This document shows positions 36,159-63,480 of a stretch of DNA of 64,000 nt, in pieces. Made by a program: the position numbers and the translations under genes. The stretch is from Hydrolagus colliei (lineage: Eukaryota): the NCBI GenBank assembly GCA_035084275.1, contig CM068752.1:8246001-8310000 (forward strand). Reading direction: 5' to 3'. The first letter of the stretch is position 1; every line of letters begins with the position of its first letter. The notes beneath the pieces were generated by a model. The model was not told where the DNA came from, did no database searches, and saw only the letters and a list, made by a program, of their open reading frames with translations.

Positions 36159-36285
36159 GCTTTAAGAACGGTTGATTTGATTATTGGTCAATCGCTTTGT
36201 GTCACTGACGACCAATCAGGTGAAGAAATGTATTCCGCGATCCCTTATCACGCCCCCTTCCCATCGCCAACCTCTGCGCAGAATC
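36159..36285 (+). promoter_or_regulatory. Variable-exon promoter module (V2)
   Basis: GCTTTAAGAA(36159)-N15-TTGG-N23-ACCAAT(36211)-N22-GATCC(36239), then a C-rich tract. Confidence 0.75.
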
Positions 36286-36513
36286 AGTGCTCATTATTAT
36301 TCCAGGTTTTCCATTCAACTCGGAGGATGGGCCTCAAATACTCTAAGGAGATTTGTACAATTACTTCTGGGCATTATGACCAACACAGGCCGGCCTTTCA
36401 CTCAGAAGGCGTCTATTCTGGAAGCGGGAGGTAACGAACCACAATATTATTTGATACATGAGTAATTATCGCGCCCCTCTATCAGCGCATTTCGTGAGGA
36501 TTTTGTTGCAGAA

Positions 36514-38988
36514 ATGGCTTGTTGGATGGATCATGGGGTGTCACGCTGGCAAGCCCTGTATTTTATTCTGATCTACGTTTCGGATTGTGTTTGCGGAGAC
36601 ATCCGTTACTCGATTCCCGAAGAGTTAGACCGTGGGGCCTTTGTGGGAAATGTCGCCAAAGATTTGGGATTGAACGTGAAACGGCTGGGCGCCCGCAAGT
36701 TCCGGATTGTGGCCGATCACGGGAAACAATACCTGGGTGTGGATGGACAAGGGGGGACATTGTTCGTTGATGAGAGAATCGACAGGGAGCGGCTGTGTGA
36801 ACAAAGCCTGGCTAAGTGCGTGTTGGAGATGGAGGCTGTGGTTGAAAATCCCCTCCATCTGTACCGTGTTGAGGTTGAGATTGTGGACGTGAACGACAAC
36901 TCACCGGAGTTTCAAGGCAGCGAGTTTCGCTTAGAAATCTCGGAGACGACTGTCCCCGGAGCTCGCTTTCGGCTCCAGAAAGCGCACGACCCCGACTCGG
37001 GTACCAACAGCGTCCGCTCCTATCACCTGAGCGACAATGATCACTTCTATTTGGAACTACAGACTGAGAGCGAACAGGGAGTCATCCCGGAGTTAGTCCT
37101 TCAACGGCCGTTGGACCGAGAGGAACAGCCGACTCATCAATTAACGCTGACTGCAGTTGATGGCGGGATCCCAGAAAGATCCGGAAGCACCCGTATAGTT
37201 ATCAACGTCTTTGATGTCAATGATAACTCGCCCGTTTTCGATCAGGACGTCTATCAGGTCACCACCACCGAAAACTTGCCCAAAGGTTATTTAATAGTGA
37301 AAGTGAATGCGATAGACGTGGACGAAGGCTCGAACGGTCAGGTAATCTATTCCTTTGGCGACTACACGCCGGACAGAGTGCGCAAACTGTTTCACTTGGA
37401 CTCTCAAGCCGGGGAGATCACTGTAACTGGCGCGTTAGACTTTGAACAAGCCAAGGAGTATGATATTTCAATACAAGCTAAAGACATGGGTCCAGCCGCG
37501 GAGCCAGTGTACTGCAAAGTTCTAGTGAAGGTCACGGATGTTAATGATAACAGCCCAGAAATATTGCTAACCTCGCTTTCAGGTCCCATCCAAGAGGACG
37601 CGGCCGTGGGAACGGTGTTGGCTCTTTTTAAAGCAACGGACAGGGATTCTGAAGAGAGAGGGAACGTTTATTGTCACATTAGCCCAAACATCCCCTTTAA
37701 GCTGGAAAGCTCATTTAATAACTATTACACGGTGGTGCTGAATGGTCCGCTTGATCGGGAGCAAGTGGCCGACTACAATGTGACCATGACATGCAGGGAT
37801 GGCGGATCGCCTCCCCTCTCCGCCAACCAAACCATCGCGGTTCAGGTCTCGGATACAAACGATAACGCGCCACGCTTTACGCAGCCAGCGTTCACCGTGT
37901 ACTTAATGGAGAATAACGCCGTGGATACGTCCATTGGCTCTGTCTCCGCTTTCGACCCAGATTTCAGCGAGAACAGCAGGCTGCGGTACTTTATTCTGGA
38001 CAACACCATCCAGGAAATGCCTGTCTCTACACTCCTCCTCCTCCATCCGGACAGTGGAGTCCTGTCAGCGCAACGCTCCTTCGACTACGAGCGCCTCAAG
38101 ACTTTTGCCGTTAACGTGGGAGTCAGCGATGGCGGGTCGCCTCCTCTCAGTAGTAACGCCACTGTGAATGTGGTCATCGTGGATCGGAATGACAATATCC
38201 CTGTCATCGTATCACCCCCTTCGAGTCCCACATTCCCAGCAGAGGAGACGATGCCTTGGTCCTCTGATCCCGGTTATCTAGTTACCAAGGTTACAGCCAC
38301 AGACGCCGATTCGGCGGAAAACGCCCAACTCACCTACCTGCTTCTTCACCCAACAGACACAAGCCTCTTCACTGTGGCTCCACAGACGGGAGAAATCTGG
38401 ACCATCCGGAATTTGGCCAACAAAGACTCTCTCCAGCAGAAACTCGTGGTCCTTGTAAGGGACGACGGAAAGCCACCCTTATCATCCACAGTCACCATCA
38501 ACGTGGCGGTGCTGACTGATGGAACCGTACATCTATCTGGTGCCACCGCGTTGGGAAACCCGGGACTCTGGACCACTAATTTAAGATTTTATTTAATCAT
38601 ATCGTTTGGCACAATCTCATTTATTTTTCTGTTGGTTATAATTATCCTCGGGGTTAAGGTGCACAGGGGTAGGAGTGGTGATGGCGATTACACCAGGTGT
38701 CTTTTGGGCGCCATACTCTGCTGCGAGCGGGGAAATTCGCCGCACGGAATTCAAAAGGCTAGTGTAAATATTCAAAGGCAACCAAATTACCCAGAGGTTT
38801 ACGAGAGCGAGGCTTTTACTCAAACATTACGCTATGGTGTGTGTCCAACTTTAGATTTGCCCATGAATGATTTAATGTTTCTGAAGTTGTACGGGTCAGC
38901 TGCCCCCACGATCAATGTCAAAACGGGAACTTGTATGGCGAGTGACACTGGGAAGGCATCAAATTCTGCAGCCACTGATTTCCTTGAG
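36514..38988 (+). CDS. Clustered protocadherin variable exon V2, 825 codons
   Basis: Signal peptide, DIRYSIPEE, six EC repeats, TM FYLIISFGTISFIFLLVIIILGV, donor GAG|GTGAGA. Confidence 0.95.
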
Positions 38989-40039
38989 GTGAGACCAGAG
39001 ATATAAAAATAAGTGTAATGTTTCCCTCAATGCATACACACTACAACAGGTTAAACTGTCTAACATTCTGACGTTTTGACTAAGTTGCTCAAACGGAAGT
39101 ATGCAATTCCAGAGTCATACCAAATTATTGAGAGTTTAGGAATCGTATGATTAAATTACGAATAGAAATGCCAATTTCTTGGTTATATCAATTATTTCTA
39201 TATTTGAATATAAATCAATCAATGATTTATCTTCCGTATTTACAAAATTCAGCAAAAGCTGCTGTAAATATAAATTCTATCTAGTGATCAGCCGGTGCTA
39301 ACTCCAAACGGCAACCCACACGGATGTTCCAAATCCAGTCTGTATTGAATCTCATTCTACATCGTTAAAAGAAAAATAGTTGAGTTAAAATATTAACATA
39401 AATATTAAATAGAACTCCCCCCACCCCTCACCCATTTGTTAGCATCTAATATTGGATGTTTTGAAAAAGTTTAGCGAATCTGTCTATTGTAATAACCTGG
39501 TGAACACTATGTAATTATTTGTCGAGGGGAAGCTTCATTAGATGAATAGCTTTAATCCCAGAACCACTTAGTCTTGTATTTTAATTGATTTAGTCCCTAT
39601 CCACAAGCTGGCAAACAGTATCTGACCGTATCCAGCATTGTGCATCACTATCCTTGTTTAACCATTATCACTGTGGTTGTACTTGAAATGAAATTCATTC
39701 AAACTAAAATTTGACAGCCTCGGGAGTAACATATCAGTTCTGAAAGTAATTCGCTGCAGTTACGAGATTTAGTGATGAAACAATAAACTAAAATAACTGG
39801 AGTGGGTATGTAATCATGGTTGTTTATATGTGGCAAGTAGTCTTGGCGAAGCAATTGTTTGCAGATGTTTTACAGCCAAAGTCATACTTTCAGAAATATT
39901 GGTGTTTATTTTTTCTGTTTGTCTTGGTTATTTATCCCTCATATTATTTCTTCTCGTCTGCTCTACAAAGCTCATTCGTTACAAGAACTCAAATGTCCAC
40001 TACAATTCATAGGGTTTCAGTGAAAGTTGAGTAAGTTCC

Positions 40040-40544: not shown

Positions 40545-40631
40545 GCTTTAAGAACCGCAGCGTGTGGTTACTGGACTGGGCTGATCATTGCTCTGTGCAC
40601 CAAAGAGGATCTGAGCTGCGTGCCCAGATAC
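40545..40631 (+). promoter_or_regulatory. Degenerate variable-exon promoter module (V3)
   Basis: GCTTTAAGAA-N16-CTGG-N24-ACCAAA-N22-GATAC: spacing is kept but both CCAAT boxes are mutated. Confidence 0.6.
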
Positions 40632-40905: not shown

Positions 40906-43235
40906 ATGGAAACCCAGCAGTGGGAACGATTTTGGGTTGTAAAGTGGCAAGTGATTCCTTTATTCTTTTCTTGTGTGAAAATTCTGGTGTGCGGACAGTT
41001 TCGATATTCGATTCCCGAAGAGCTGGGTGAGGGTGCCTTTGTTGCAAACATCGCTGCCGATTTGGGTCTCGACTCGGCCAAACTGTCCAGCCTGCGATTG
41101 CACACCGCGTCCGGATCGAGAAAGCAATATTTCAACGTTGACACGGAAACCGGGATATTATCTGCATGTGAACGACTTGACAGAGAGGAGCTGTGTGGAC
41201 CGATGCACAGCTGTGTTATGCATATTGACGCTGTCCTTCAAAACCCTCCGGAACTCTATCGCCTGGCAGTGGAGATCCTGGACGTGAATGACAATCCGCC
41301 CACTTTCATGAACAGCCAAATCAGGTTAAATATTCTCGAATCGGCTTTACCTGGCACTCGTTTCCCGCTGGACGGCGCGCACGATCCGGATGTGGGTCCG
41401 AATTCGATGTACACCTACCAGCTCAGCAAACACGAACACTTCGTTCTGGGTGTACAGGCTCTGGCTGGTGGGAATATGTTTCCGGAATTATTGCTGGAGA
41501 AACCTCTGGATCGAGAGAGGGTTCTCGTCCATCAGTTGCTGTTGACGGCTGTCGACGGTGGGACCCCAACAGCGAGATCCGGGACAGTCCAAATTATTAC
41601 CACCGTCCTGGATGTTAACGACAACGTGCCGGTGTTTGATCGGTCGGTTTACGAAGTCATTCTGAGAGAAAACGTACCACTGGGTACAATGATAACTATA
41701 CTAAATGCCACCGATTTGGATGAAGGTTCAAACGGTGAAATCGTTTATTCATATTCGAGCCGTACAGCGGATCAGGTCCGCGAGGCTTTCAACCTTGACT
41801 CCCAAACCGGGAAGATCAGAGTGAAAGCCAATGTGGATTTTGAAGAAGCCCATTTTTACGAGATGTACGTGCAGGCCATGGATGTCCCAGGCGCTGGTCC
41901 ATCCCAATGTAAAGTTCTGGTGACTATCACTGATGCGAACGACAACGTCCCGGAAGTGATATTGACCTCGGTGACCTCGGTGACCCAGAAAATGCATTTT
42001 CGGGCTCTGTAGTAGATCTAATATGTGTCACCGACCGTGACGCGGGGGACAACGGTCAGGTGTCCTGCCGGATCGCCAACAACCTCCCTTTCAAACTGTT
42101 CTCCACTGTGAACGGCTATTACAAGTTGATGACCGATGGTCCATTGGATCGTGAGCTGGTGTCTGAATACAACATCACGATCATAGCTTGGGACATGGGC
42201 TCCCCTTCTCTTTCAGTCAATAAAAACATCCTGCTCGAGGTTTCCGACGTCAACGACAACATCCCGCAATTTGAGACATCACCGTGCACCGTCCACTTGA
42301 TGGAGAACAACGCGGTTGGGGCTGTGATCCACTCGGTGAGAGCCATTGATCCCGATTCCAATCAGAATGCTCAATTGACCTATTCCATCCTGGAAAATGA
42401 TGACTCGAACGACACCTCCATCTTCAAATTCGTTTCTATCAATTCGGCCACTGGTGACCTTTACGCGCAACATTCGTTTGACTACGAACACGTGAAAAAT
42501 CTTCAGTTCCACGTTCACGTCCAGGATGGCGGGTCGCCAGCCCTCGGCAGCAACGTGTCCGTGGGTCTAATCATCCTGGATCAGAATGACAATACCCCAG
42601 TGATAGTATCGCCGCGGCCAAATCCAGAGTCCACCTTTGTGAGAGAAACAATGCCAAGGTCGGCTGACCCTGGTTACATGGTGGCGAAGGTGAGTGCGGT
42701 CGACTCGGATACCCACGCAAATGCGCGGCTCACCTACCGCCTGCTGCGGAGAATGGATGCGACTCTGTTTGCCGTGTCCGCCGAAACGGGTGAAATCTGG
42801 ACAATTCGGCGTTTCGATGCCAAAGATCCATCCAAGCTGAAACTAGGTATTCTGGTGACTGATCACGGCCAACCTCCCCTCTCGACCACACTGACAATCA
42901 CTGTCACGGTGTTGGACAGTGTCAAGGACGCCCTGTCAGGCGGTAGCGGCTGGATTGGACTTCTCGATTTTTCCAGTGATACATTTTTGCATTTAATTAT
43001 ATCCCTGGGATCAATTTCCCTTGTTCTCCTGCTGGCTATCATCGTCCTTGTTGTCACTGTGTGGCGCAAGTGTGGCTGCTGTTCGTCTGCTCAATGTTGT
43101 GGTCCCAAATTGACATATTCAATACCCGTAGCTCAAGCCACAACACTCCCTTACTCGTCCTCCAATGCTAACGCATCATCGAATCAGCTCGATAACTCTA
43201 TGGCCAGTCAAAATTCTTATGACTTTGAATTGTAG
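40906..43235 (+). pseudogene. Protocadherin variable exon V3, disrupted (1-bp frameshift, stop without splice donor)
   Basis: ORF 40816-42012 covers EC1-3 and ORF 42060-43235 covers EC4-6 plus TM; adding one C at CCC 41984-41986 restores LTSVTSVTPENA; ends in TAG at 43235 with no GTGAG donor. Confidence 0.75.
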
Positions 43236-45525: not shown

Positions 45526-45799
45526 AATCAACTCGAAGAATGCGGTATTAAGATGAACCTACTATTTAATTACATTTAATTTATTTAGGTTACCATCAAT
45601 GTACTTTAGCTCTATTTATTCTTTCTTTAAAAGTTCTGGAAATCTAGTGAATTGCAGTAAATTCGATAGCGACTCACAGTTCCAACTCATTTTAATACAA
45701 GCCGAAAAAGATAAATGGAAAAAAATGGAATTCAAAAAAACATTTTAGTTGCACAACCATAATTGCACGGCTGCCTGCAGAGGGTTTAGGGGCTATCCA

Positions 45800-45920
45800 G
45801 CTTTAAGAAACATGAAGCAACCTGGTTGGTTGAGTCTGTGAGTGGCGACATCCACCAATAAACGCATTGGTCTGTGGCTGGTGATCCACACTCCCTCCTC
45901 TTCACCAGCATTCAACAATG
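45800..45920 (+). promoter_or_regulatory. Variable-exon promoter module (V4)
   Basis: GCTTTAAGAA-N16-TTGG-N24-ACCAAT-N23-GATCC; TTGCACAACCATAA at ~45749. Confidence 0.78.
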
Positions 45921-46163
45921 GGAAATCGAAATACAGGCTGAGTGAGATGGTGAGAGGACAGGATATGTAATCGTATGGACTTCTGAAGGGAATATCAACA
46001 TCTACCAGAACAATATTAGCCACTGAAATTTGTCAAATAAGGATATTTTGTTTATTTAAAAGAAAGCTACACTCGTAAGACGGTTTCATAAGGATGTAAA
46101 TCACCGAATTACCGAACAAAGCGGTGTGTCCTGCTCAAGCGATCACATGTATGGACAGTGGCG

Positions 46164-48590
46164 ATGGTCTGTTTCAAAAGGTATTGGATGTTTTTCTGGC
46201 TATTGCATTCGATGTTCTTATTCTGGGATTCGGTGACCGCACAGATTCGTTATTCGATTCCGGAAGAGCTGCAAACTGGGGCCTTTGTGGGGAATCTCGC
46301 CCACGATTTAAGGTTAGACGTAAAGGAGATTTCGACTCGCGGTCTGAGGATTGTCTCGGGTGCCAGGCAGCAGAATTTGGATGTCAATTTAGACAATGGA
46401 TATTTGTTTATCAAAGAAAAAATAGACAGGGAACAGCTCTGTGGGCCGAGTGTCGCTTGTGTGCTGTCTTTCGAGGCCGTGCTCCACAATCCCCTCAATT
46501 TATACCACGTCGAAGTGGAGATTTTGGATGTAAACGACAACGCGCCCAGTTTCCCAAACAGCCAATTCCGCCTAGAAATCCCAGAGGCGGCGGCACTAGG
46601 AGCTCGTTTCCAGCTGGAGTCGGCCTATGATCCAGATGTCGGTAGCAACTCCCTGCAGTCCTACCGACTGGTATCGAACGATTTCTTCACTCTGGATGTG
46701 CAGACGCGCAGCCGGGATGAGAAAGTGCCCGTGTTAGTGCTGGAAAAGCCCCTGGATAGGGAAAAGGCACCGAGCCACAGGTTAGTGTTGATCGCTGAGG
46801 ATGGCGGGGTTCCTCGGAGGTCAGGGACTGTACAAATAACGATCATAGTGGAGGATGCCAACGACAACGAGCCGGTTTTCCCTGAGTCGGATTTTACAGT
46901 CAGTCTGTCAGAGAACGCGCCCAAAGGAACCCTGGTGATGACACTGAACGCCACTGATCTGGATGAAGGTGCAAATGGAGAGATAGTTTACTCGTTCAGC
47001 CCCCTCACGACTGCTATGGTGCGGGAACTGTTTGATTTGGATTCTCAAAGTGGCGAACTCAGAGTTAAAGGGAGTTTAGATTATGAGGAAAATAATATGT
47101 TTCAGATTAATGTGCAAGCGAAGGATAGAGGTCCTCATGCCACTCAGGTTTACTGTGATGTCTTAGTGAACATTGTAGATGTGAATGACAACGCACCCCA
47201 GGTGACCCTGACCTCTTTGTCCAGTCCAGTGCGAGAAGATGCTTTGCCCGGGACAGTGGTGGCTTTGATCAGTGCGACTGACAAAGATTCGGGACAAAAT
47301 GGACAGGTGCAATGTGAAATCGGGAAGGACGTTCCTTTTAAACTTGACTCATCCTTGAAAAACTATTACAGATTGCTGACTCGGCAGCCGCTGGATCGTG
47401 AGAATGTCTCCAATTATAATGTAACCATCACTTGTCGGGATAGAGGAAGCCCGCCTCTGGTAACCAATAAAATCATTCAGATGGAGGTTTCAGATATCAA
47501 CGATAACGCACCACGCTTTTCACGGCCTTTATACAGAGCCCAAGTGATGGAGAACAATTTGGTTGGCGTTTCCATATTCTCCATAACTGCTTTCGATCCG
47601 GATTTGAACCAGAACTCTCGACTCTCCTACTCCATCCTAGAGAGTTTGGTTCAGGGCGAGTCGGTCTTATTGTATGTTCAAATCAACTCTAACTCCGGGG
47701 TCATAGTGGCCCAGAGATCTTTTGATTACGAGCAACTCAAAAAGTTTCAGATCCAAGTGCAGGCTCAGGACAGTGGAGTGCCTCGGTTGATCAGTAACGT
47801 GTCTGTGGATGTCATCATCCTGGACCAGAATGACAACTCTCCAGTTATCGTGTCTCCATTACCAGAGTTTGGCTCAACCGTGACAGAGACTGTATCTCGG
47901 TTGGCAGAGCCAGGCTACCTGGTGGCCAAGGTCTCGGCCATTGACGCTGACACGGGGCAGAATGGGCGTCTGTCTTACCAGATTCTCCAGGCCACTGACC
48001 GTGGGTTTTTCACCATCTCCCCTGACACAGGAGAAATCTGGACCATCCGCAGTGTTAGGGACAGAGATGCCAACAAGCAAAGGCTGGTCATTGTGGTGAA
48101 GGACAATGGATCACCATCGCTGTCAGCCACCATGACCATCATCTTATCGTTGGTGGGAGGTGATACAGAAATGCTCTCCGATAGCAGCGGGGTGTCAGGG
48201 GCCTCGGGGATTCCGTCTGATTTAAGCCTTTACATGGTCGTATCTTTAGGAATTACCTCGACCGTGTTTCTCGTGGTTTTGATTATTCTGGCTGTGAAAG
48301 TCCACAGAAACAGAGATGGTTTTGGCGCCCATTTTCCTTTGCCCCCTCGCTGCTGTTTCGAGTCAAGGAACTCGCTGAATGGAATCCAGAAAGCCAGTAG
48401 GAACATCCAGATACCTCCCAACTACGTTGAGGTATTTGGGGGTGACCCGCTATCTCAGAGGTTTCGCTATGGGACAGGTTCAAGTTTTAATTCAACCAAG
48501 AGGGATTTCGTGTTCTCCAACTGCAGGAGTGAATTGGGAAAAGATAATCGTTGGCAGTCATCAACTGGCAGAAACACTATAAATGGCGAG
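46164..48590 (+). CDS. Clustered protocadherin variable exon V4, 809 codons
   Basis: ATG 46164, QIRYSIPEE, six EC repeats, TM, NSLNGIQKASRNIQIPPNYVEVFGGDPLSQ, donor GAG|GTGAGA. Confidence 0.95.
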
Positions 48591-49569
48591 GTGAGATTGT
48601 TCTTGGGAAGTCTTACAGACTTGAACGGCGCTATACAAATGTAATTTGTTTTTGTTTATCTAGTAAACAGTCGTAGATTTATTTGATATGGCTTTATGCA
48701 AATCTAAATTGAGCTTAAGAACGATTGAGTATTTTGAGTCTGTTTTTCTCTCTTTAAGAATTACCTCCATCATATCTCTCCAGCGTTTCAGTATTCTTCC
48801 TGTTAAGGTTCACAGAATTTGAAAATTTGATAATGAAATTTTGATAGTCAAATTTTGGATTGAAAACGTTTTTTTTCGGAATTTGAATAAACAACAGATC
48901 TGAAATCTTGAATGCTTTCTGGTTCTGGTGTTCAAATTCAATCTTTCCTTCCCATATAGATAACACCAAGAAACGTTCAGCACCTTGGAACGTCCTCCCG
49001 ACGTGAAAGATGTTCTATAAATATAATTGTATTGTCCTCGATAATTAAACATCTGTAATGGCAGGCAGTCCCACATAAATGTACGTTAGCGGAAGTTCAG
49101 TTACATGGAGTTAGAAAATAATCATAGATTCTGTTCATAGGTGAGCTAATCCGTGTGATGAAAGATAAAATCATCGTTAATTCCTGAGAGGTAGTTGCTG
49201 ACTTCACAGCTGTCTAATTGCACGTTGTTGTTGTTGATATAACATTGCAGGCATTAGGATATTATTTATGCGTTTATATAGCATTTCTTCCTCTGAGATT
49301 CATCGCAATTATAAGTTGTTGGTTTGGGATACAATTTATAGTAAACTTGAGGACTTTCATCTGCATTTGGCTTCTTGAAAAATAGATCATATGTGTCGAA
49401 CTGAGACCCTCTCTCGATGTGTTCGTGTTCCTACGGAGTTCAATGTGTCGAGGTGATTTGTGGACTGCAAACCTTTTTAATACCGCCCCCTCACCTCAAC
49501 CATCCTCTTCAATCTCAGAAAGTCACAAAAATCATTAGACGTCACATCTCGACCTGTGTTACCTAATCT

Positions 49570-49762: not shown

Positions 49763-50239
49763 TATGTTTTATTTACATAATCTGAAAGCGGTCATAGTTG
49801 ACTGTATAACCAAATGCTATTTTCCTCGCACAGTAACTGATATCGGAAGAACTTTTATTGCTTGATCTACGAGAAGTAAAGCGATTGTGAATTTTTCCAG
49901 CTCACCAGAATCATTTTTGTAATCGACGTAATTAATCTCCAGAGTTTACGAGGAGCAAAATTCCAAACAGCCTGCATGACTTAAAGGGTGAATCAAGAGA
50001 GTGCGGCATTTGGGGGCAGTTTACCATAATTACTCCCCAAAGAAACGTGGGAGACAGACTGTTTCTGAGCGTTCTTTATGGATTACTCTCACAGTGTTAT
50101 ATATAAAGTTATTTTTATTAACATCAATTTAGCAGCAGGAGAGCCAAATATCCAAACCAATGAACCGAATTTCTCTATTGCATTTTCGATTGCACAACCA
50201 TAAATGCTATTTTACGCAAGTATGTTTTAGGTCGTTCCA

Positions 50240-50370
50240 GCTTTAAAAACGAGTCGAGTGTTGATTCGTTGAGCGCGAGGCTCCATCCTTTGACCAATCA
50301 AAGGCCCGAATGGTGCTTGAGATCCTGCCCGCCCTCTTGCTCGCCCATCCACCATTACGTACAACCAGAT
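50240..50370 (+). promoter_or_regulatory. Variable-exon promoter module (V5)
   Basis: GCTTTAAAAA-N15-TTCG-N24-ACCAAT-N22-GATCC, then CTCGCCCATCCACCAT. Confidence 0.78.
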
Positions 50371-50616
50371 GAGACACAAACATGCCTAGCGAGCAGTGTG
50401 GTGTGAATAAAGCTTTCTACCTGTGTCCAGGGGGTGATTTTAACAAAAGGAAGACTTTGTAGGAATTATAGCAACGTTTATTGAAGACGAATACGTGGAA
50501 ATTATCAGGTTTGAACGTCTAGTTTTAACAACGAGAAATGTTTACTTATCCCAAGCAATCATTGAGCGGTGCCGTGCCGTGCTGAACTCAAACGATTGGG
50601 ATGCTTTGTGCTGGAA

Positions 50617-53082: not shown

Positions 53083-53322
53083 GTGAGACGCTTATCAAAT
53101 TAACCCCTGAGGGTGTTATTTGGATGTACAAAAATCACTGGGAATTTCAATCACACTAATGCTAATATGGAAGAGATAACAAAAAAGTTTTGAATTTGCC
53201 AGCCATTTCCTGATTTTATTTGTCTAGATCAGCATTCTGTGAACTGTCCTATAATTGCAACCTGTATTGTTTTCATAGTTTCTTAGTTCCTTTCACATTC
53301 GTTTGCCATAATTTTGTTAGGG

Positions 53323-53642: not shown

Positions 53643-53647
53643 ACATA

Positions 53648-54730: not shown

Positions 54731-55428
54731 TGCTAATTAATGACTGTAGTTGCGAAAGTGTCTTGGACTCATAAACGCACCCGTACTTGTGTTTGCCATA
54801 GTTCATTCCATTGTTAACATAAAAACAATACGATGTAAATCAAGGGAGCACTAACACATGTGTATCAGGCACATATGGCTAAATGCCAGATCCTCACCAA
54901 TCTTACTTAATTAGTTCAGTGGCAGTGCAAAATATATTGTATTGTTTTTGCAAATCGACTGAGAGGGATGAGAACACCCACAGTGTCCAGATCTGCCCAG
55001 TTGGTAAGGCGATTGTCTTATGCCAGGAGATGCCGAGGTCTTGAGTTAGGTTGATTACTTCCTTGAATTGAATTTGTATTTCTCCAATAAAGAAATTCGG
55101 CTGACATTACTACAAATGTTAATTCTGGGGAAAATAATAACTCACGTATCAAAACTAAGGTTGCAGTGAATAAGAATAATTTAACGAAGGGCAGACTGGC
55201 AGGGTCGCATAGGAAAGTCAATTGTGACTTTAATAAAATATTGAAACGGATGTATATTCTGATGGCTAATGGAGACGTTGTCTTTATATTATAATCTGTC
55301 AAATAAATGTCCTAGCATTTCAGTGGCGTGAACGACTTGTCCAAACTATGCCAGGGGAAGGTTCGTTCAATTTTGGTTGCCCAACTAAAATTATATTTGT
55401 TTACGCAGCATTTGCTTGGGACGTTCCA

Positions 55429-55560
55429 GCTTTAAGACAATCCCACGGTCCTGATTGGCTGAACACCGTCCTTCTTATATTCACCAATGGAGAGCTGAAA
55501 AGCGACCAATGATCCTGACTGCCCCCTCCCCTCGCTATCCGCCATTGCGCACAGTTAGAC
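55429..55560 (+). promoter_or_regulatory. Variable-exon promoter module (V6)
   Basis: GCTTTAAGAC-N16-TTGG-N24-ACCAAT-N22-GATCC, then CCCCTCCCCTCGCTATCCGCCAT. Confidence 0.8.
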
Positions 55561-55806
55561 ACGGTGCAAAAAATGGAGAACGACCTTCATATCAGGCTAT
55601 GTACCGGTTTGATTCAGTGAATTTAGGGGAGAAATATGAGGATTCGAGTGAAATAATCACGGCGGTTTTTACACAACTAAAGGTAACTTCGATTATGCAT
55701 CGATTTGTCCATGTAGAAAAAAAATCTGATAAGTAAATTAACCAAATAAGGAAACTAGATGCGGCCCCGCGCCGTGTTCAGGCAATTGGAATGCTTTGTG
55801 TTTGAC

Positions 55807-58266
55807 ATGGGAAATTGTAAGATACTTTGGCTGTTCAAGTGGTCGATATTGTGCTCCCTTTTCCTCTGGTGGGATCTAGTTTCTGCACAGATTCGTTACT
55901 CGATTCCCGAAGAGCTGCAAATAGGTGCTTTTGTGGGGAGTGTGGCTGCCGATTTAGGGTTGGATACAAAGGAGCTCTCGGCTCGCGGTTTTCGCACTGT
56001 GTCTGGTCCCCGAGCGCAGTATCTGGGCGTAGATTTGGACATTGGGATTTTGTTTGTGAAAGAAAAGATTGACAGAGAAGAGCTGTGTGGTGCGAGTCTC
56101 GCTTGCATTTTGTCTTTAGAGGTGGTGATTGAAGAACCTTTCAATCTGTACGACGTGGAAGTGGAGGTAGTGGATGTGAATGACAATGCTCCCAGTTTCC
56201 CAAAGAGCCAGTTCCGCCTTGAAATCTCCGAGGTTGCGGCGCCAGGATCTCGCTTCCCCCTGGAGAGTGCTCACGACCCTGACGTTGGAATCAATTCCCT
56301 GCAAACCTACCGACTCGTTAACAATGAATATTTCACCTTAAATGTTCAGACGCGAACTGTGGCTGGGAAGTTGCCAGTGCTGGTGTTAGAAAAGTCCCTG
56401 GATAGAGAACAGCAATCGACCCACAGGTTAGTCCTAATCGCCCAGGACGGAGGGACACCAGAAAGATCAGGCACAGCTGAGATACTGATCAAAGTGCAGG
56501 ATGCTAATGATAACGCGCCGGTTTTCACCGAGTCCGTGTACAGAGTCAGCCTGCTGGAAAACACACCGAGGGGAAGCCTCATGATCAGAGTGAACGCCAC
56601 AGACCTGGATGATGGGAATAATTCAGAGATTGTTTACTCATTCAGTAGTCACACATCTGCTAATGTGCGAGAAATATTTTCTTTAGATTCCAAAATTGGG
56701 GAAATCACAGTCAAAAGTAACTTGGACTATGAAGAATTCAATGCTTTTGAGATTAACATAGAAGCGAAGGATAAGGGTCCATATGCAATACCCGCCTATT
56801 GTGATGTGTTGGTGAACATTATTGATGTGAATGATAATGCCCCCGAGGTGACACTAAACTCCTTGTTCAGTCCAGTTCGGGAGGACTCACTGCCCGGGAC
56901 AGTGGTGGCTTTGATCAGTGCAGCCGACTCAGATTCTGGGGAGTATGGACAGGTACAATGCCTAATCCCGCATAAACTTCCCTTTAAACTGGATTTATCG
57001 TCAAGGAAGTATTTCAGATTGCTGACTCAGCAGACACTGGATCGAGAGAAAGCCTCGGAATACGATGTCACAGTGATGTGCAGTGACAGAGGAACCCCGC
57101 CTCTCACATCCAACCTTACAATCCGAGTGGAGGTTTCAGACATCAATGACAACGCACCGCGGTTTACGCAGCCTTTGTACAGAGAGCAGGTGATGGAGAA
57201 CCAGGCTGTGGGGACTTCAATATTCTCAGTGTCCGCCTTTGACCTGGATGTTAATCAAAATGGTCGCCTCACCTATTCAATTCCCGAGAGTCAGATTCGG
57301 GGAGAGTCGGTGTCCACCTATGTTTACATCAACTCAGAAAATGGCGTGATACATTCTCGGAGATCCTTTGACTACGAGCGAATGAAAAGCTTTCAGTTCA
57401 CGGTTCAAGCAGAGGATAGTGGCTCGCCACCCCTCACCAGCAACGCCTCGGTGGATGTCACCATCCTGGACCAGAACGACAACTCCCCAGTCATCGTGTC
57501 TCCATTACCAGAGTTTGGCTCAACAGTGACAGAGACTGTATCTCGGTTGGCAGAGCCAGGCTACCTGGTGGCCAAGGTCTCAGCCACTGACGCTGACACT
57601 GGGCAGAATGGGCGTCTGTCTTACCAGATTCTCCAGGCCACTGACCCTGGACTTTTCACAATTTCTTCTGACACAGGAGAAATCTGGACCATCCGCAGTG
57701 TAAGGGATAAAGACCCGGCTAAGCAGAGGCTGGTCATTGTGGTGAAGGACAATGGATCACCATCGCTATCAGCTACAGTGACTATTATCTTTTCAATGGA
57801 AGGTGGTGACACTGAAATGCTTTCTGATACGAGCGTATTAGCTGAGGATCCGTGGCTGACGACAGACGTAAGCATTTACTTAGTCATATCTTTGGGGATC
57901 ACCTCATCCATATTCCTTGTGGTGTTAATTCTGCTGGCTCTCAAAGTCCACAATAACAGAAATGGCTTTGGTCACGGTAACTATACTGGACTGACTTGTT
58001 GCTGCTTTGAAGCAAGGGAATCGCTGAATGGAATTCAAAAGGCTAGTAGAAATATTCACCTACCTCAGAACTATGTCGAAGTGTTTGGAGGTGATCCACT
58101 CTCACAGAGTTTCCGCTACGACTCTTGTTCGACTTCGAATTCTACCAAGGGAGACTTCATGTTTACGTCGGGTCGTAGGAATAACTTCAGGAGTGAAACT
58201 ATTGGGAACGAAGGAGCCCTTCATCAAGAGAACCCCTCAAATTATAGGATCGCTGTAAATAGTGAG
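55807..58266 (+). CDS. Clustered protocadherin variable exon V6, 820 codons (alternative in-frame ATG at 55759)
   Basis: MGNCKILW signal peptide, QIRYSIPEE, six EC repeats, TM, donor GAG|GTGAGG. Confidence 0.95.
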
Positions 58267-58959
58267 GTGAGGCACTTCCAAGAATAAACCCTTACAGGTT
58301 TGATTCGGTTGTTTAGAGAATTCAATCCTACAGAAAATTGACGTGTTTATTTGCGAGATAACAATATCTGAATTTTGAGCTCGGTTTTCCCCAAGTTCAT
58401 TCGCAGCCAAGTTTCACTGTGTGTGCTCTGCGTGTACGTCTGTATGTTTTTGTCTGTACGTTTTCTGTTCTCATTTACAAGTGGATTATTGGACAAGTAC
58501 AATATCATTGGGATCTTCCGAAAATTGCACAAATTTCCCTACTCGTTCCAGGGTCTCCAATATAAAATTAGTTGATATCAGTCCCAGCTGTGTGTACGTG
58601 TGCAACTTGAATGGTTTTGAAGCGCTTTGAGGCGCCGTGGAGGGCGCTATGTAAATCGAAATTCTTGTTGTTGTGACAGGTTGGTGAGGTATTCATTGAA
58701 ACAGATGGTACTCTGTGTATAAAAGCTACAAGAACGTGTTACCAGAAAGGATCGCCTTTTCCAGGACAATGTAATCATAGAAGGATCAGATTAAATGAGC
58801 CCGAGGTCCTGCTTCATCTAAATCTATTTTGCAATGAAGAGTAGTTCCTTGCTGATGTTATTGTTGCTCTTTTTACGCCTACTGTAATGTTGACTTCACG
58901 TCTGGGCGAGCAAACTTCAGTGCAGTGATATTTATTGACTTTCCATTTCTCCTTATATT

Positions 58960-59020: not shown

Positions 59021-59321
59021 AGTACTTATTATAATAAAACGAGACTGGCAATGCGGTCAATGAGGGAACAACATTTGGGAACTATCCACAAGATTGCATG
59101 GAATAAGAGATTTTAATGGCGGAATACAGTGAAACTTTTTGGGAGGGGTGTGGGGCGGGGTGGGGGGAGAGAGTTGTCAGAATAAGTGATTCTTTTGGCT
59201 TCTAATGTTTATTTATAATGAGTAATAATATCGCAGACGGTAAAAAAAACACTAAATTATGGAAAGGAGTAGCTAATAATATATTTGATCACACAGCCTT
59301 ATATTTACGCAAAGCATTACA

Positions 59322-59455
59322 GCTTTAAGAAACACTCACACGTCTGATTGGTTGAATATCATTATGACTACGTAGACCAATAGGAAGTTGAGAAGCTGCC
59401 AGAGATCCAGGCTTCCCCCTCCCCTCGCCATCCTCCATTACATACGACCAGATGC
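59322..59455 (+). promoter_or_regulatory. Variable-exon promoter module (V7)
   Basis: GCTTTAAGAA-N16-TTGG-N24-ACCAAT-N22-GATCC, then CCCCTCCCCTCGCCATCCTCCAT. Confidence 0.8.
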
Positions 59456-59703
59456 GATGCAAGAATGGGGGAGCGAGCTGCTCCATGTTATATCAGGTTC
59501 TGAATATCCATCTCTGGACGACTTTATTAGAATAATAAGAAGAATTGTGGAACCTAACCCCAGCGGTTATTCGACAGGGCAGGTACTATTTTCTAATGTA
59601 GCTGTTTTATAGGTGAAAATGTTAGACAAATAACTTGATTTACGGAAACGCAAAACGGGCGCTGTGTTGCGCCGAAGAAATCTGGGATGCTTTTGTTTTG
59701 GAA

Positions 59704-62178
59704 ATGGGGTATTTTAAAGCAAATTGTTTACTGAGGTGGCGATTGTGGGGCTGTATATTCGCCTCCTGTGAACTGGTTTGTGGACAGATTCGTTACTCGA
59801 TTCCCGAAGAATTGCACGAGGGTGCCTTTGTTGGGAATATCGCCGGCGATTTGGGCTTGAAAGCGGCTCAGCTTTCAGAACGCAGTTTTCGCATCGTCTC
59901 CACGGCCAGGAAACCGTATTTGGACGCGAATTTGGACAAAGGGATTCTGTTCGTGAAGGAAAAAATCGACCGAGAAGATGTGTGTGGGCCCAGCCTGGCT
60001 TGTGTGTTGTCCTTCGAGGCTGTACTGGAAAACCCTTTCAATCTACACGACTTGGAAGTGGAGATTCTGGACGTAAACGACAATGCTCCAAGCTTCCCCA
60101 AGAGCCAGTTCCGCCTGGAAATCTCGGAGGTCGTGGCCCCCGGATCGAGCTTCCACCTGGAGGGAGCACACGACCCGGACGTAGGAACCAATGCCCTGCA
60201 AACCTACGAGCTGTTTGCAAACGAATATTTCACCTTAAAGATCGAACAGCGCAGTGGGGATGGGAAGCTGCCGGTGCTTGTGTTGGAAAAGCCACTGGAT
60301 AGGGAATTGCAGTCGAGCCACCGTTTAGTGCTAGTCGCCAAGGACGGGGGTTTGCCCGAGAGATCCGGTACCGCAGAGATCGTAATCGTTGTTCAGGATG
60401 CTAACGACAACGCGCCAGTTTTCACCCAGTCCGTGTATAGTACCAGTCTGTCGGAAAACGCACTCAAAGGAACCCTGGTGATGAAATTAAATGCCACTGA
60501 CTTGGACGATGGCACGAACGGAGAGATAGTTTACTCGTTCAGCAGCCATACTTCTAGCAGAGTGCGACAACTGTTTAGTCTCAGTTCCCAAAGTGGTGAA
60601 ATCAGAGTCAAAGGTGATTTGGATTACGAGGAAAATCGCGTATTTGAGATCAACATAAAGGCGACAGATAAGGGCGCTTATGCAATTACTGTCTACTGCC
60701 GTGTACTTGTGAATATTACTGATGTGAATGATAACGCCCCGGAGGTGACACTGGTTTCGTTGTTCAGTCCAGTTCGCGAGGACTCTCTTCCAGGCACTAT
60801 AGTGGCTTTAATCAACGCGGCAGACAAAGATTCGGGAGAGAATGGACAGGTGCGGTGTCAGGTCGCGAACGAACTTCCTTTCAAATTGGAGCCTTCTTCA
60901 AAGAAATACCTCCGATTGATAACTCAACAGCCCCTTGATCGCGAAAAGGCTCCCAAGTTCGACATTACTGTCCTGTGCAGCGATAGAGGAACCCCTGCTC
61001 TCACTTCCCGCAAACGTATCCGTTTGGAAGTTTCAGATATCAACGACAACGCGCCACGATTTACGCAGCCGGTATACACAGCACAGGTGATGGAGAATAA
61101 CGTGATCGGCGCCTCAATTTTCTCGGTTTCCGCCGTTGATCCGGATTTTAACCAGAATGCCCGACTCATTTATTCCATTCTAGAGAATCCGATTCAAGGG
61201 GAATCGGTATCCAGTTACTTCTCCATCAACAAGGAGAATGGGATAATTTCGTCTCAGAGATCTCTTGACTACGAGCAGATCAAAGGTTTTCAGATCCAGG
61301 TTCAGGCACGGGATAACGGAGAGGCCCCACTTGCCAGCAACGCTTCTGTGGATATCATTATCCTGGACCAGAATGATAACGCCCCAATAATTGTGTCTCC
61401 CATACCCGAATATGGCTCCATGGTCACAGACACCGTTTCACGTTTGGCCGAGCCTGGCTACCTGGTCGTCAAAGTAACAGCTAATGACGCTGACACTGGG
61501 CAGAATGGACATCTGACTTACCAAATTCTCCAGGCTACTGAGCCTGGACTTTTCACCATTTCCCCCGATACGGGGAACATATGGACAATCCGCAGGATGA
61601 CAAACCACGATGCTTTGAAGCAGCGGTTAGTTATTGTGGTCAAAGACAATGGATCGCCATCACTCTCAGCCTCGGTGACTATCATCTTATCAGTGGAAGG
61701 GGGAGACACAGACACCATGGTGCCTGACAAGAGTGGGTTGACTGCAGAACCGTGGCTCACGACAGACATAAGCATTTACCTAGTTATATCTTTAGGGATT
61801 ACATCATCTATATTTTTTGTGGTCTTAATCCTGCTCGCCATTAAGATCCACAACAACAGAACTGGCTTTCGTCACTCCAGTGATTGCCTGGGCATGTGCT
61901 ATTGCTTTGAGGCAAGGAACTCACTCAATAGAATTCAAAGAGCCAGCAGAAACATTCAGATACCCCCTAACTATGTTGAAGTATTTGGGGGCGATCCACT
62001 CTCCCAAAGTTTCCGTTATGGATCCTACTCAACGTCAGGTTCGACCAAGACAGACTTGATGTTTCCCAACAGGTGTAACTCACCCACACACAGGAACAGC
62101 GTGAGGAGTGGAGCTATTGGAAAAGAAACTCCACAAGTCTCCAGTTCTGCTGAATATAGAAATCCTGTAAATGGTGAG
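59704..62178 (+). CDS. Clustered protocadherin variable exon V7, 825 codons
   Basis: MGYFKANC signal peptide, QIRYSIPEE, six EC repeats, TM, donor GAG|GTGAGG. Confidence 0.95.
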
Positions 62179-63348
62179 GTGAGGTGCTTTAAAATAAACA
62201 TCACTTGTTAGTTAGGGATTCCACGGGTGTTCGCAGCAAAATTCGTAGATATATTTCTATCGGTTACTTTTTGGTTTCAGAGTTGAAGCATCTGCGAAAA
62301 AAAACAGCTGACACGCCAGTCTTCTAATATATGTATGTTGTATTTGTCCAGGCAGAAGTTGTATGCATAACGCAGTGTATTATATGTTCGTAAGTGTTTA
62401 TATATGTATACATGATCTAGATAAAAATAACCACAACAAAATACAACAGTAAATACGTAGTTGTGGCTGTATAAATTAACAGTTCTTGCATATAAACACA
62501 TGCGTCGTGCATTTAGCTTTCGGTGTATTACACTTTTAAACCAATCAAACTTGTTGTGGGAGGAATATCAGGGTTAGATTCCACCAATCTAAGAATGTTT
62601 TGCTCAGGATCTGGTTTTGTATTGCCCGTCTTATCCAAAGAGAAGTCACCGCGGTCCTCATTGCTGGTACACATTTTAACCAGGGTATTGTCACGTTTGC
62701 TATGTTATTCCTTGAAGAAACAAGTAGATGGCATTTACATTTCATTGTGTTTCTGGCGACAAAACTGTTCTTTTGTTCATTTTCAGGCATCCAAGCAAAG
62801 CCAGGTTAGATATATAGCAGTCAATGTAGAGAGAGGTTCCTTATTTGGTTCTGCCGATAGATCTCAGCAGAATTATTTGTGCGAAGTGGATGCAGCATCG
62901 TGCGTTCTGCTCAAGGTCATTTGGAGGCTCTCAGTAATCAAACTTGTTTCATTTGGAATAGTGACCAGGAAAACTCATACTGCACTTGTCAAGATACATT
63001 AGAACACATTTTACAAGAGGTGAATGGTCAATATGGTAACCTTCGGTAAAGCTCATTGCAGAATAACGTGATTATAATTGAATATCGGGATGCTAAGGCA
63101 AGTCTGTGATAGAAAAAACACACCTGTTGAATTCGGACAGAATCTTCTCTGTGTTTCTTACATTAAGTCTATATTTAATTGAGGTATGGATTGGTAGGCC
63201 TTATGGCAACAACTACAACCTTGTGCCAGTGAACTGTATTTAACAGACTGGTGAAAATATATAAGGAAATGAATTTAAAGGGTCAGTTCAATTATGGTTG
63301 TGCGCCCGTAAAGGTAAACGTACCACATTGGCTTACTCGAACGTCGTA

Positions 63349-63480
63349 GCTTTAAGAAAGGAGAGCTATTCTGATTGGTCTAGTGCGAATGTGCCTCCAT
63401 CCACCAATAAGTAGCTCGCATGTGACGGGAGATCCAGACTGCCCCCTTTTCCTTCCCATCCACCATTGCATACGAACAGA
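63349..63480 (+). promoter_or_regulatory. Variable-exon promoter module (V8)
   Basis: GCTTTAAGAA-N16-TTGG-N24-ACCAAT-N22-GATCC, then CCCCCTTTTCCTTCCCATCCACCAT. Confidence 0.8.

What the first reader, a model, noticed from the sequence alone, without database searches (positions are those of the whole stretch)
36159..63480. Fixed-spacing promoter grammar repeated before seven variable exons
Seen: GCTTTAAGAA - N - (CTGA)TTGG - N - ACCAAT - N - GATCC, usually followed by a C-rich tract, starting 355-382 bp before each ATG (36159, 40545, 45800, 50240, 55429, 59322, 63349). Spacer lengths are 15/23/22, 16/24/22, 16/24/23, 15/24/22, 16/24/22, 16/24/22 and 16/24/22, while the spacer sequences are unalignable. 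Length is therefore conserved while sequence is not. The core is a pair of oppositely oriented CCAAT boxes (NF-Y-like). Known: mammalian Pcdh promoter choice centres on CTCF-bound conserved sequence elements, and I see no clean CTCF consensus in these modules. Inference: a stereospecific, possibly CTCF-independent or ancestral promoter-choice module that I do not recognise as described.
Basis: partly seen in the sequence, partly recalled or inferred. Interest (0 to 1): 0.82.

Follow-up and report, generated by a model that had tools for sequence, protein, structure and literature searches.

The report
CCAAT-type promoter module of chimaera protocadherins
Seven neighbouring protocadherin (neuronal cell-adhesion) gene segments of a chimaera-like fish each carry the same upstream control module, built around CCAAT boxes at fixed distances and lacking the CTCF-binding motif that mammalian protocadherin promoters use; it is a real, selectively kept promoter element, but its role in gene choice is untested.

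Summary
All seven start coordinates hold. Five of seven sites fit the full grammar. One (50240) has a broken distal box. One (40545) is decayed and sits before a frameshifted pseudo-exon.

The genes are clustered-protocadherin variable exons of a holocephalan (best hit Callorhinchus milii, 77% identity). Motif positions survive between paralogues whose synonymous sites are saturated, while spacer 1 is at chance identity. This points to purifying selection, not recent duplication or gene conversion. The conserved unit is larger than described, about -75 to +150 around GCTTTAAGAA.

Only 4 of 7 modules have a true inverted CCAAT. The proximal CCAAT is intact in 6 of 7. Spacers 2 and 3 are weakly alignable. 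No module contains a CTCF-like site or a conserved CGCT box.

My best reading is a subfamily-specific, NF-Y-type proximal promoter, a CCAAT-based counterpart of the mammalian CSE. A role in promoter choice, an ancestral status and CTCF independence in vivo are all untested. No RNA runs or orthologous DNA could be obtained. Yu et al. 2008, the elephant-shark cluster paper that may already show these motifs, was not readable here. The scan's earlier notes hold no record of this module on other DNA.

The parts
36084..36309 (+). V1 promoter module: bZIP-like TTGCACAAC block upstream, A-box 36159-36168, distal ATTGG 36183-36187, proximal CCAAT 36212-36216, GATCC 36239-36243, C-rich tract
36514..39006 (+). 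V1 variable exon ORF (830 aa; six cadherin repeats plus Cadherin_C_2); GT donor candidate at 38989
40545..40631 (+). V2p decayed module: A-box intact; boxes read ACTGG, CCAAA, GATAC; no C-rich tract
40906..43010 (+). V2p pseudo-exon: frame 1 changes to frame 3 at about 41961-41979; homology ends at V3 residue 696
45725..45953 (+). V3 module: A-box 45800-45809, distal box mutated (GTTGG 45825-45829), CCAAT 45855-45859, GATCC 45883-45887
46164..48644 (+). V3 variable exon ORF (826 aa from the ATG)
50165..50391 (+). V4 module: A-box GCTTTAAAAA 50240-50249, distal box mutated (ATTCG 50264-50268), CCAAT 50294-50298, GATCC 50321-50325, C-rich tract plus CCATCCACCATT
50617..53103 (+). V4 variable exon ORF (828 aa)
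55354..55581 (+). V5 module: A-box GCTTTAAGAC 55429-55438, ATTGG 55454-55458, CCAAT 55484-55488 (an extra CCAAT lies directly before GATCC), GATCC 55511-55515, CTGCCCCCTCCCC, CCGCCATTGCG, AAAATGG block
55807..58287 (+). V5 variable exon ORF (826 aa from the homologous ATG; an in-frame ATG also lies at 55759)
59247..59474 (+). V6 module: A-box 59322-59331, ATTGG 59347-59351, CCAAT 59377-59381, GATCC 59404-59408, CTTCCCCCTCCCC, CGCCATCCTCCATT
59704..62211 (+). V6 variable exon ORF (835 aa)
63274..63501 (+). V7 module: A-box 63349-63358, ATTGG 63374-63378, CCAAT 63404-63408, GATCC 63431-63435, CTGCCCCC, CCATCCACCATTGC
63728..64000 (+). V7 variable exon, 5' part only (cut by the window end)
30005..32629 (+). 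V0 variable exon (874 aa), used as contrast: no module upstream; only a GGCGCTC at 29768-29774 (ATG-235), which does not score as a CTCF site

Best explanation
The repeated unit is the proximal promoter of one subfamily of clustered-protocadherin variable exons in a holocephalan (chimaera-like) genome. It was inherited by tandem duplication and has been held in place by purifying selection.

It is a composite, TATA-less-looking promoter of about 225 bp. In 5'-to-3' order it contains:
- one or two bZIP/C-EBP-like palindromes (TTGCACAAC, TTACGCAA);
- an invariant AGCTTTAAGA box with no factor assigned;
- a distal inverted CCAAT (Y-box-like CTGATTGG; the Y-box name is recalled);
- a proximal CCAAT;
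- GATCC;
- a C-rich CCCCTCCCC tract (Sp/KLF/MAZ-like; recalled);
- a CCATCCnCCATT block, followed by AAnATGG (YY1/initiator-like; recalled).

Inferred mechanism: NF-Y binds the proximal CCAAT, and the distal one where it is intact, and opens chromatin. Factors bound to the C-rich tract and an initiator about 80 bp downstream of the proximal CCAAT then set the start site near the CCATT block. The module has no CTCF motif. Enhancer contact for these exons is therefore unlikely to rely on a promoter-bound CTCF site of the mammalian CSE type.

Shown: the anatomy, its position-specific conservation, the absence of a CTCF/CGCT motif, and decay in the pseudogene copy.
Inferred: which factors bind, where transcription starts, and any role in stochastic choice.
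For: Gene identity: Cadherin_2, five Cadherin stretches and Cadherin_C_2. PDB hits are gamma, alpha and beta protocadherins and PCDH10, with E values down to 5.7e-193. The best database hit is C. milii at 77% identity over 100% of V1, against 55-61% for sharks. GT donors sit at the conserved E|VR position.

Selection: dS is 0.65-1.7 among V3-V6, and above 2.8 or not computable for V1 against the rest. Even so, V1 matches 37 of 54 columns invariant in V3-V7 against 25 of 83 variable columns (Fisher p=1.1e-5). V0 shows no such pattern (21 of 54 against 31 of 83, p=0.86). Spacer 1 is at chance identity, so conservation is motif-wise rather than tract-wise.

No other shared element: the only 9-mers shared at matching positions across the six intergenic units come from the module.

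Pseudogene: the frameshifted V2p has lost both CCAAT boxes, GATCC and the C-rich tract.

Not a genome-wide repeat: depth over the V5 and V6 modules in a related species is 35.6 and 37.1, against 45,767 for a real repeat 600 bp away.

Close relative: run X6 shows 16 listed differences in 55000-55419, none listed in 55420-55557, and then 7 in 55558-55876.

NF-Y knowledge: the CCAAT box typically lies about 80 bp upstream of the TSS in either orientation, and NF-Y is stereo-positioned with partner factors (PMC3730095, passages). CCAAT dimers with preferred spacing define promoter classes (PMC4982600, passages).

No CTCF.
Against: - No RNA run holds the stretch, so neither the transcription start nor promoter activity is shown.
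- Upstream ATGs are not depleted between the module and the start codon: 40 observed against 39.8 expected over six genes. This fits poorly with a 240-nt 5'UTR that starts at the CCATT block.
[quoted passage not shown] A double-NF-Y architecture therefore cannot be general.
- The best-conserved box, AGCTTTAAGA, has no assigned factor.
- The cross-species signal is weak. Contig 17 of X6 reports 18 differences and only 16 are listed, so up to 2 may lie in the module (Poisson P for 2 or fewer is about 0.2). X11 shows 2 differences in 154 bp over the V6 module, similar to its rate elsewhere.
- Factor names for the C-rich, CCATT and bZIP-like blocks rest on recalled consensus sequences, not on a matrix library.
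Confidence: 0.6

Rival explanations
1. The module is an upstream regulatory element, such as a proximal enhancer, a chromatin-opening element, or a bidirectional or antisense promoter. It is not the core sense promoter, and the sense start site lies closer to the ATG.
For: Upstream ATGs are not depleted between the module and the ATG (40 observed against 39.8 expected). A second conserved block, TGCTTTGTGCTGGAAATGG, abuts the start codon in V4-V7. Read on the minus strand, the order is a perfect-context CCAAT (CAACCAATCAG) and then, about 20 bp on, a TATA-like TTCTTAAAGC (the TATA reading is recalled). NF-Y CCAAT arrays can drive bidirectional promoters (PMC1802594, search listing and abstract only).
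Against: There is no RNA evidence either way. The block order CCAAT, C-rich tract, CCATT, AAnATGG on the plus strand fits a sense promoter with a start about 80 bp after the CCAAT (PMC3730095). No ORF or conserved feature lies upstream on the minus strand.
Confidence: 0.2
2. The module is a diverged CSE that still recruits CTCF through its C-rich tract, so promoter choice works as in mammals.
For: On the minus strand the C-rich tract reads AGGGGGCAG(T) in V5 and V7, which equals the 3' half of the recalled CTCF core. A CGCT element has been reported for the elephant-shark cluster (statement in PMC2926608 citing Yu 2008). Like the CSE, the module sits at a fixed distance before each exon.
Against: The CCA half of the core is missing in all 7 modules. 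The best approximate-PWM score in any module is 6.8 of 28.5, against 18.2 for the best site in the window. There is no hit with up to 2 mismatches to the 15-mer consensus. No CGCT is positionally conserved in V1 or V3-V7. The tract varies (CTTCCCCC in V6, CACTCCCTCC in V3).
Confidence: 0.1
3. The similarity is passive. It is left over from recent tandem duplication or spread by gene conversion, with no selection on the motifs or the spacing.
For: The units are tandem paralogues. Among V4-V7 the GATCC-to-ATG distance (296-300 bp) is as constant as the module, so part of the length constancy is simple inheritance. Spacers 2 and 3 keep above-chance identity.
Against: dS is near or beyond saturation. 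Flanks and spacer 1 are at chance identity, while discrete motifs are invariant. Conversion would give contiguous identical tracts, and none is seen. V1 and V3 differ from V4-V7 by 16-22 bp downstream but by only 1-2 bp inside the module. The motifs decay in the pseudogene.
Confidence: 0.05
4. The module is part of a dispersed repeat or transposon-derived sequence that merely landed near the exons.
For: NF-Y sites are abundant in some LTR families (PMC3730095). High-copy repeats do lie between the exons (58546-58742 and 59137-59333).
Against: In the window the composite occurs only at the seven homologous positions. Depth over the modules in a related genome is at single-copy level. An exact-pattern scan of metagenome contigs found 0 matches, though that collection is unlikely to hold fish DNA.
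Confidence: 0.03

Closest known systems
Mammalian protocadherin conserved sequence element (CSE) with its adjacent specific sequence element (SSE), bound by CTCF
   Same: It is a conserved element at a fixed distance upstream of every variable exon of a subfamily. Shared motifs are interleaved with paralogue-specific sequence whose length matters: 5, 10 or 15 bp linkers between the SSE and CSE abolish alpha-6 promoter activity (PMC3333863). A YY1 site lies just 3' of the alpha-6 CSE (PMC3333863), and a YY1-like AAnATGG lies 3' of this module.
   Different: There is no CGCT box and no CTCF-like motif. The module starts 355-382 bp before the ATG rather than about 200 bp (PMC4978886, PMC7811963). 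It is about 225 bp long and multipartite, rather than about 22 bp plus 20 bp. Its recognisable sites are CCAAT boxes.
[quoted passage not shown]
   Same: These are precedents for subfamily-specific promoter elements, or no CSE at all, within protocadherin clusters (PMC4978886 section 18; PMC7811963 section 10).
   Different: The sequences of those motifs are shown only in figures that I could not see. None is described in the read text as CCAAT-based. This module is longer and belongs to a cartilaginous-fish subfamily.
NF-Y-dependent CCAAT promoters with paired, stereo-positioned CCAAT boxes
   Same: The CCAAT pentamer sits in a good flanking context (CAACCAATCAG on the minus strand; RACCAAT on the plus strand). 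Two boxes lie at a constant distance, with GC/CT-rich partner sites. Stereo-positioning and preferred dimer spacing are known (PMC3730095, PMC4982600).
   Different: The known preferred spacing is for direct repeats (31 bp edge to edge, PMC4982600). Here the boxes face opposite ways at 24-25 bp edge to edge (29-30 bp centre to centre). The distal box is not a CCAAT in 2 of 6 intact genes.
MHC S-X-Y promoter module
   Same: It is a multi-box promoter with strict spacing that ends in an inverted CCAAT, the Y box CTGATTGG (recalled). The distal box here reads CTGATTGG in V5, V6 and V7.
   Different: No RFX-like X box or S box is recognisable upstream of the distal box. This is a resemblance of principle only and was not tested with matrices.

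Membership tests
Protocadherin CSE (CTCF-binding promoter element) | Present upstream of each variable exon of a subfamily at about the same distance from the ATG | tested here: met
   Seven of seven consecutive exons V1-V7 carry it 355-382 bp before the ATG. V0 lacks it. The distance is larger than the roughly 200 bp given for mouse and frog (PMC4978886).
Protocadherin CSE (CTCF-binding promoter element) | Highly conserved CGCT box | tested here: not met
   No positionally conserved CGCT or AGCG lies in the 800 bp upstream of V1 or V3-V7. Only V5 has CGCT in the C-rich tract, where V1, V4 and V6 have CGCC.
Protocadherin CSE (CTCF-binding promoter element) | Sequence matches the CTCF core motif | tested here: not met
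   The IUPAC 15-mer with up to 2 mismatches gives 8 hits in the window (3.35 expected), none in a module. The approximate recalled PWM scores at most 6.8 of 28.5 in the modules.
Protocadherin CSE (CTCF-binding promoter element) | Bound by CTCF/cohesin; methylation-sensitive promoter choice | not testable with these tools
   No ChIP, methylation or RNA data are available. Only DNA runs hold the stretch.
NF-Y (CCAAT-box) promoter | Intact CCAAT pentanucleotide | tested here: met
   The proximal box is intact in 6 of 6 intact genes (CCAAA in the pseudogene). The distal inverted box is intact in only 4 of 6 intact genes.
NF-Y (CCAAT-box) promoter | Box about 60-100 bp upstream of the transcription start | not testable with these tools
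   No RNA runs were found. The conserved CCATT block lies 55-65 bp, and the AAnATGG block about 85-90 bp, 3' of the proximal CCAAT. This is compatible but does not show a start site.
NF-Y (CCAAT-box) promoter | NF-Y occupancy | not testable with these tools
   No ChIP data.
Dispersed repeat / transposon fragment | Many copies, unrelated to gene starts | tested here: not met
   In the window it occurs only at the seven homologous positions. Depth in a related genome is at single-copy level, against 45,767 for a neighbouring repeat.

The most novel reading that the evidence does not exclude
A cartilaginous-fish protocadherin subfamily selects among its variable exons without promoter-bound CTCF. 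NF-Y acts as a pioneer factor on a rigid CCAAT scaffold. The paralogue-specific spacers, held at fixed length, serve as gene-specific recognition sequences, as the mammalian SSE does. CTCF-based choice would then be one of several solutions, and possibly a later one.
Probability: 0.1. Interest if true: 0.8.

Novelty: new variant of a known kind. Interest (0 to 1): 0.4.

Why it matters
Stochastic protocadherin promoter choice is explained in mammals by CTCF sites (the CSE) at each promoter. A whole run of variable exons in an early-branching jawed vertebrate keeps a different, CCAAT-based module under selection and shows no CTCF motif. If that holds, CTCF-anchored looping is not a universal feature of clustered protocadherin promoters. 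The chimaera and elephant-shark subclusters would then be a natural system for asking what else can support isoform diversity. The module also offers a compact, testable promoter with built-in natural mutants: V3 and V4 have lost the distal box, and V2p has lost both. The value is limited because subfamily-specific and CSE-less protocadherin promoters are already known, and the elephant-shark paper may already show these motifs.

Tried and rejected
I tried two substitutes. (a) Related-species reads gave only a weak signal, and the table of differences was cut after 56598, so the V6 module was not seen. (b) An exact composite-pattern scan of metagenome contigs gave 0 hits. I did not run a protein-based metagenome scan, because protocadherin queries would most likely pull human contamination, which I am not to collect.

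RNA evidence. No RNA run holds the stretch, so start sites are unknown.

Pairwise semi-global alignments to compare indel rates inside and outside the module collapsed to short overlaps and matched shuffled controls. I discarded them and used anchor-to-anchor distances instead.

V0's GGCGCTC as a canonical CSE. It is at the right place (ATG-235), but its context does not score as CTCF (best upstream score 4.3). I leave this open.

Exonic CTCF sites. Weak minus-strand hits lie 444-450 bp after the ATG in V0, V5 and V6. They coincide with codons R-F-P-L-E-S, and hits scoring 9 or more are not enriched (13 against 9.44 +/- 2.98). I take them as coding conservation.

NRSE. The motif from PMC2926608 gave only 3-mismatch hits (5 against 1.88 expected), and none lies in a module.

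ZNF143, YY1 and Sp/MAZ readings of the 3' blocks were compared by eye with recalled consensus sequences only. None is claimed.

Literature. Six full-text searches found no paper in the library that links protocadherin promoters with CCAAT or NF-Y. PMC3333863 contains neither word. Yu 2008, Wu 2001, Noonan 2004 and Wang 2002 are not held. Supplements were not opened. The motif figures and supplements of Yu 2008 and of PMC4978886 could bear on the novelty claim.

Constant exons. tblastn of the C-terminal 260 residues of all 120 retrieved proteins against 1-29800 gave 0 hits.


Full report
WHAT IS THERE

The window carries eight tandem plus-strand ORFs of about 830-930 codons. Each has an N-terminal Cadherin_2 domain, five Cadherin stretches and Cadherin_C_2. 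The closest solved structures are clustered gamma, alpha and beta protocadherins and PCDH10. The best database hit to V1 is a Callorhinchus milii protein at 77% identity over its full length, while sharks and rays reach 51-61%. A C. milii protein also matches the V5 C-terminus at 72%.

The genome is therefore a holocephalan other than C. milii. Unchecked notes of this scan also call it chimaera-like. The ORFs run past a GT donor at a conserved E|VR position, as expected for variable exons that are spliced to constant exons lying outside the window. No constant exon was found in 1-29800.

I call the exons V0 to V7, with ATGs as follows:

| Exon | V0 | V1 | V2p | V3 | V4 | V5 | V6 | V7 |
|---|---|---|---|---|---|---|---|---|
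| ATG | 30005 | 36514 | 40906 | 46164 | 50617 | 55807 | 59704 | 63728 |

V2p changes reading frame near 41961-41979 and loses homology after V3 residue 696, so it is a pseudo-exon. V7 is cut by the window end.

THE OBSERVATION

With up to one mismatch there are 14 matches against 6.09 expected. The full grammar (A-box, TTGG, CCAAT, GATCC) matches at 5 of 7 sites.

Measured with fixed anchors, the spacing is:
- A-box to ATTGG: 14-15 bp
- ATTGG to CCAAT: 24-25 bp
- CCAAT to GATCC: 22-23 bp
- A-box to GATCC: 80-83 bp in all seven

TGATTGG-N22-27-ACCAAT occurs 4 times against a mean of 0.003 in 300 shuffles. Module start lies 355-382 bp before the ATG.

- The distal box is a true inverted CCAAT in only four modules (V1, V5, V6, V7). 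V3 reads GTTGG, V4 reads ATTCG and V2p reads ACTGG.
- The V2p module is decayed. The A-box is intact, but CCAAT has become CCAAA, GATCC has become GATAC, and the C-rich tract is gone.
- Spacer 1 is at chance identity (0.305 against 0.275, p=0.15). Spacers 2 and 3 are not (0.433 and 0.403 against about 0.28; 0 of 2000 shuffles reach them).
- The conserved unit is larger than described. MAFFT of -650..+30 shows additional blocks:
  - TTGCACAAC at about -65;
  - TTACGCAA at about -25 in V4-V6;
  - after GATCC, CTGCCCCCTCCCC, then CCATCCnCCATTnCnTAC..CAGA;
  - AAnATGG-GAG at about +140.
- V0, only 6 kb upstream, has none of it.

IS IT SELECTION?

Synonymous divergence is 0.65-1.7 among V3-V6, and above 2.8 or not computable for V1 against the rest. 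I took the 54 columns that are invariant in V3-V7:

| Sequence | Match at invariant columns | Match at variable columns | Fisher p |
|---|---|---|---|
| V1 | 37 of 54 | 25 of 83 | 1.1e-5 |
| V2p (pseudogene) | 34 of 54 | 29 of 83 | 0.0016 |
| V0 | 21 of 54 | 31 of 83 | 0.86 |

The only 9-mers shared at matching positions across the six intergenic units come from the module. Conservation is therefore confined to discrete motifs inside otherwise randomised DNA. That pattern excludes recent duplication and gene conversion as the cause.

Among V4-V7 the 296-300 bp from GATCC to the ATG is as constant as the module. Only the older V1 and V3 lineages show the contrast, with 16-22 bp of change downstream against 1-2 bp inside the module. 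My attempt to measure indel rates by pairwise alignment failed.

CROSS-SPECIES EVIDENCE

Twelve public runs hold the stretch and all are DNA. Four runs of one sample are probably the source, and others belong to relatives that share 15-32% of 31-mers.

I laid four of the relatives on 55000-60900. Run X6 gave these listed differences:

| Region | Listed differences |
|---|---|
| 55000-55419 | 16 |
| 55420-55557 (the V5 module) | 0 |
| 55558-55876 | 7, plus a 1-bp deletion |

About 4.3 differences would be expected in the module. However, contig 17 reports 18 differences and only 16 are listed, so up to two may lie in the module. X11 shows 2 differences in 154 bp over the V6 module, no fewer than elsewhere. 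The table was cut after 56598. I therefore count this as weak support only.

Depth over the modules (35.6 and 37.1) is at single-copy level, against 45,767 for a repeat at 58546-58742. The module is thus not a dispersed repeat. A composite-pattern scan of metagenome contigs found nothing.

CTCF

The recalled 15-mer CTCF consensus with up to 2 mismatches gives 8 hits (3.35 expected). None lies in a module and none recurs at homologous positions. An approximate PWM, recalled and not a database copy, scores at most 6.8 of 28.5 in any module. The window's best site, at 12893 on the minus strand, scores 18.2.

On the minus strand the C-rich tract equals the 3' half of the core (AGGGGGCAG), but the CCA half is absent. 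No CGCT is positionally conserved upstream of V1 or V3-V7. V0 has GGCGCTC at ATG-235 in a context that does not score as CTCF.

The defining features of the mammalian CSE are the CGCT box, CTCF binding and a position about 200 bp before the ATG (PMC7811963 section 10, PMC4978886 section 18, PMC3333863; passages read). These features are not met here.

WHAT IT MOST LIKELY IS

I read it as a subfamily-specific proximal promoter of the CCAAT/NF-Y type. The proximal CCAAT is intact in 6 of 6 intact genes and mutated in the pseudogene. The distal box has an ideal NF-Y context (CAACCAATCAG) where it is present.

Three points come from passages read in the literature. All five CCAAT bases are needed for NF-Y binding. 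The box typically sits about 80 bp upstream of the start site in either orientation, and NF-Y is stereo-positioned with partner factors and can enter closed chromatin (PMC3730095). CCAAT dimers with preferred spacing define promoter classes (PMC4982600).

A start site about 80 bp after the proximal CCAAT would fall at the conserved CCATT...CAGA block, followed by a YY1-like AAnATGG. For comparison, a YY1 site also lies 3' of the mouse alpha-6 CSE, and SSE-CSE spacing is critical there (PMC3333863). The factor names for the C-rich, CCATT and bZIP-like blocks are recalled resemblances, not tests.

Four points count against a simple reading:
- The distal box is not a CCAAT in V3 and V4.
- The most invariant box, AGCTTTAAGA, has no assigned factor.
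- Upstream ATGs between the module and the start codon are not depleted (40 against 39.8 expected).
- A further conserved block abuts the ATG in V4-V7.

The real start may therefore lie closer to the ATG, with the module acting as an upstream or bidirectional element. I rate that rival at 0.2.

COMPARISON AND NOVELTY

Subfamily-specific protocadherin promoter elements are already known:
- zebrafish and Xenopus alpha CSEs without a CGCT box;
- a separate 13-bp motif for Xenopus gamma2 15-36;

PMC2926608 states that a CGCT element was identified in the elephant-shark cluster by Yu et al. 2008. That paper, Wu 2001, Noonan 2004 and Wang 2002 are not held, so I cannot say whether this CCAAT module has already been drawn there.

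Six full-text searches found no paper in the library that links protocadherin promoters to CCAAT or NF-Y. PMC3333863 contains neither word. The scan's own notes hold no earlier record of the module.

I class it as a new variant of a known kind. It is a real, selected, CCAAT-based and CTCF-motif-free counterpart of the CSE. Its role in promoter choice is wholly untested. Interest 0.4.

Noticed in passing
window 40906-43010: V2p is a frameshifted protocadherin pseudo-exon. tblastn moves from frame 1 to frame 3 near 41961-41979, and homology stops at V3 residue 696. Its promoter module has lost both CCAAT boxes but keeps the A-box 10 of 10.
   Followed up: partly
window 58546-58742 and 59137-59333: These are very high-copy repeats in the V5-V6 intergenic region. 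Summed contig depth in a related species' run is 45,767 and 751, against about 25-100 around them. Many loose ends share one consensus at 58636-58674, which looks like a SINE.
   Followed up: no
window 12893-12911 (minus strand): This is the best CTCF-like site of the whole window (TTGCCTCCAGGGGGAAGCC; 18.2 of 28.5 on an approximate recalled matrix; 2 mismatches to the 15-mer consensus). It lies in the 29-kb exon-free stretch upstream of V0 and could be a boundary or enhancer-associated site.
   Followed up: no
window 30455, 56251, 60148 (minus strand); 46607 (plus strand): Weak CTCF-like matches (scores 9.2-12.1) recur 443-450 bp after the ATG in V0, V5, V6 and V3. In V5 they coincide with codons R-F-P-L-E-S, so they are probably coding conservation. 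The position is close to where mammalian alpha exons carry an exonic CTCF site, but the orientation here is reversed.
   Followed up: partly
window 29768-29774: V0 lacks the CCAAT module. It has GGCGCTC (a CGCT box) 235 bp before its ATG, the position expected for a classical CSE, but the flanks do not score as a CTCF site.
   Followed up: partly
window 48976-48992: An NRSE-like sequence, TTCAGCACCTTGGAACG, lies about 330 bp after the V3 exon. It has a perfect left half and 3 mismatches to the motif printed in PMC2926608.
   Followed up: no
window about 50595-50620, 55785-55810, 59682-59707, 63706-63731: A conserved block, TGCTTTGTGCTGGAAATGG, abuts the start codon of V4-V7. It includes an out-of-frame upstream ATG at -16. 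The in-frame residues upstream of the ATG (CFVLEMG) are also similar.
   Followed up: no
window 645-2839 (minus strand): Retroelement remnant: the ORF at 1267-2292 has an RVT_1 reverse-transcriptase domain (E=1.8e-32), with adjacent minus-strand ORFs.
   Followed up: no
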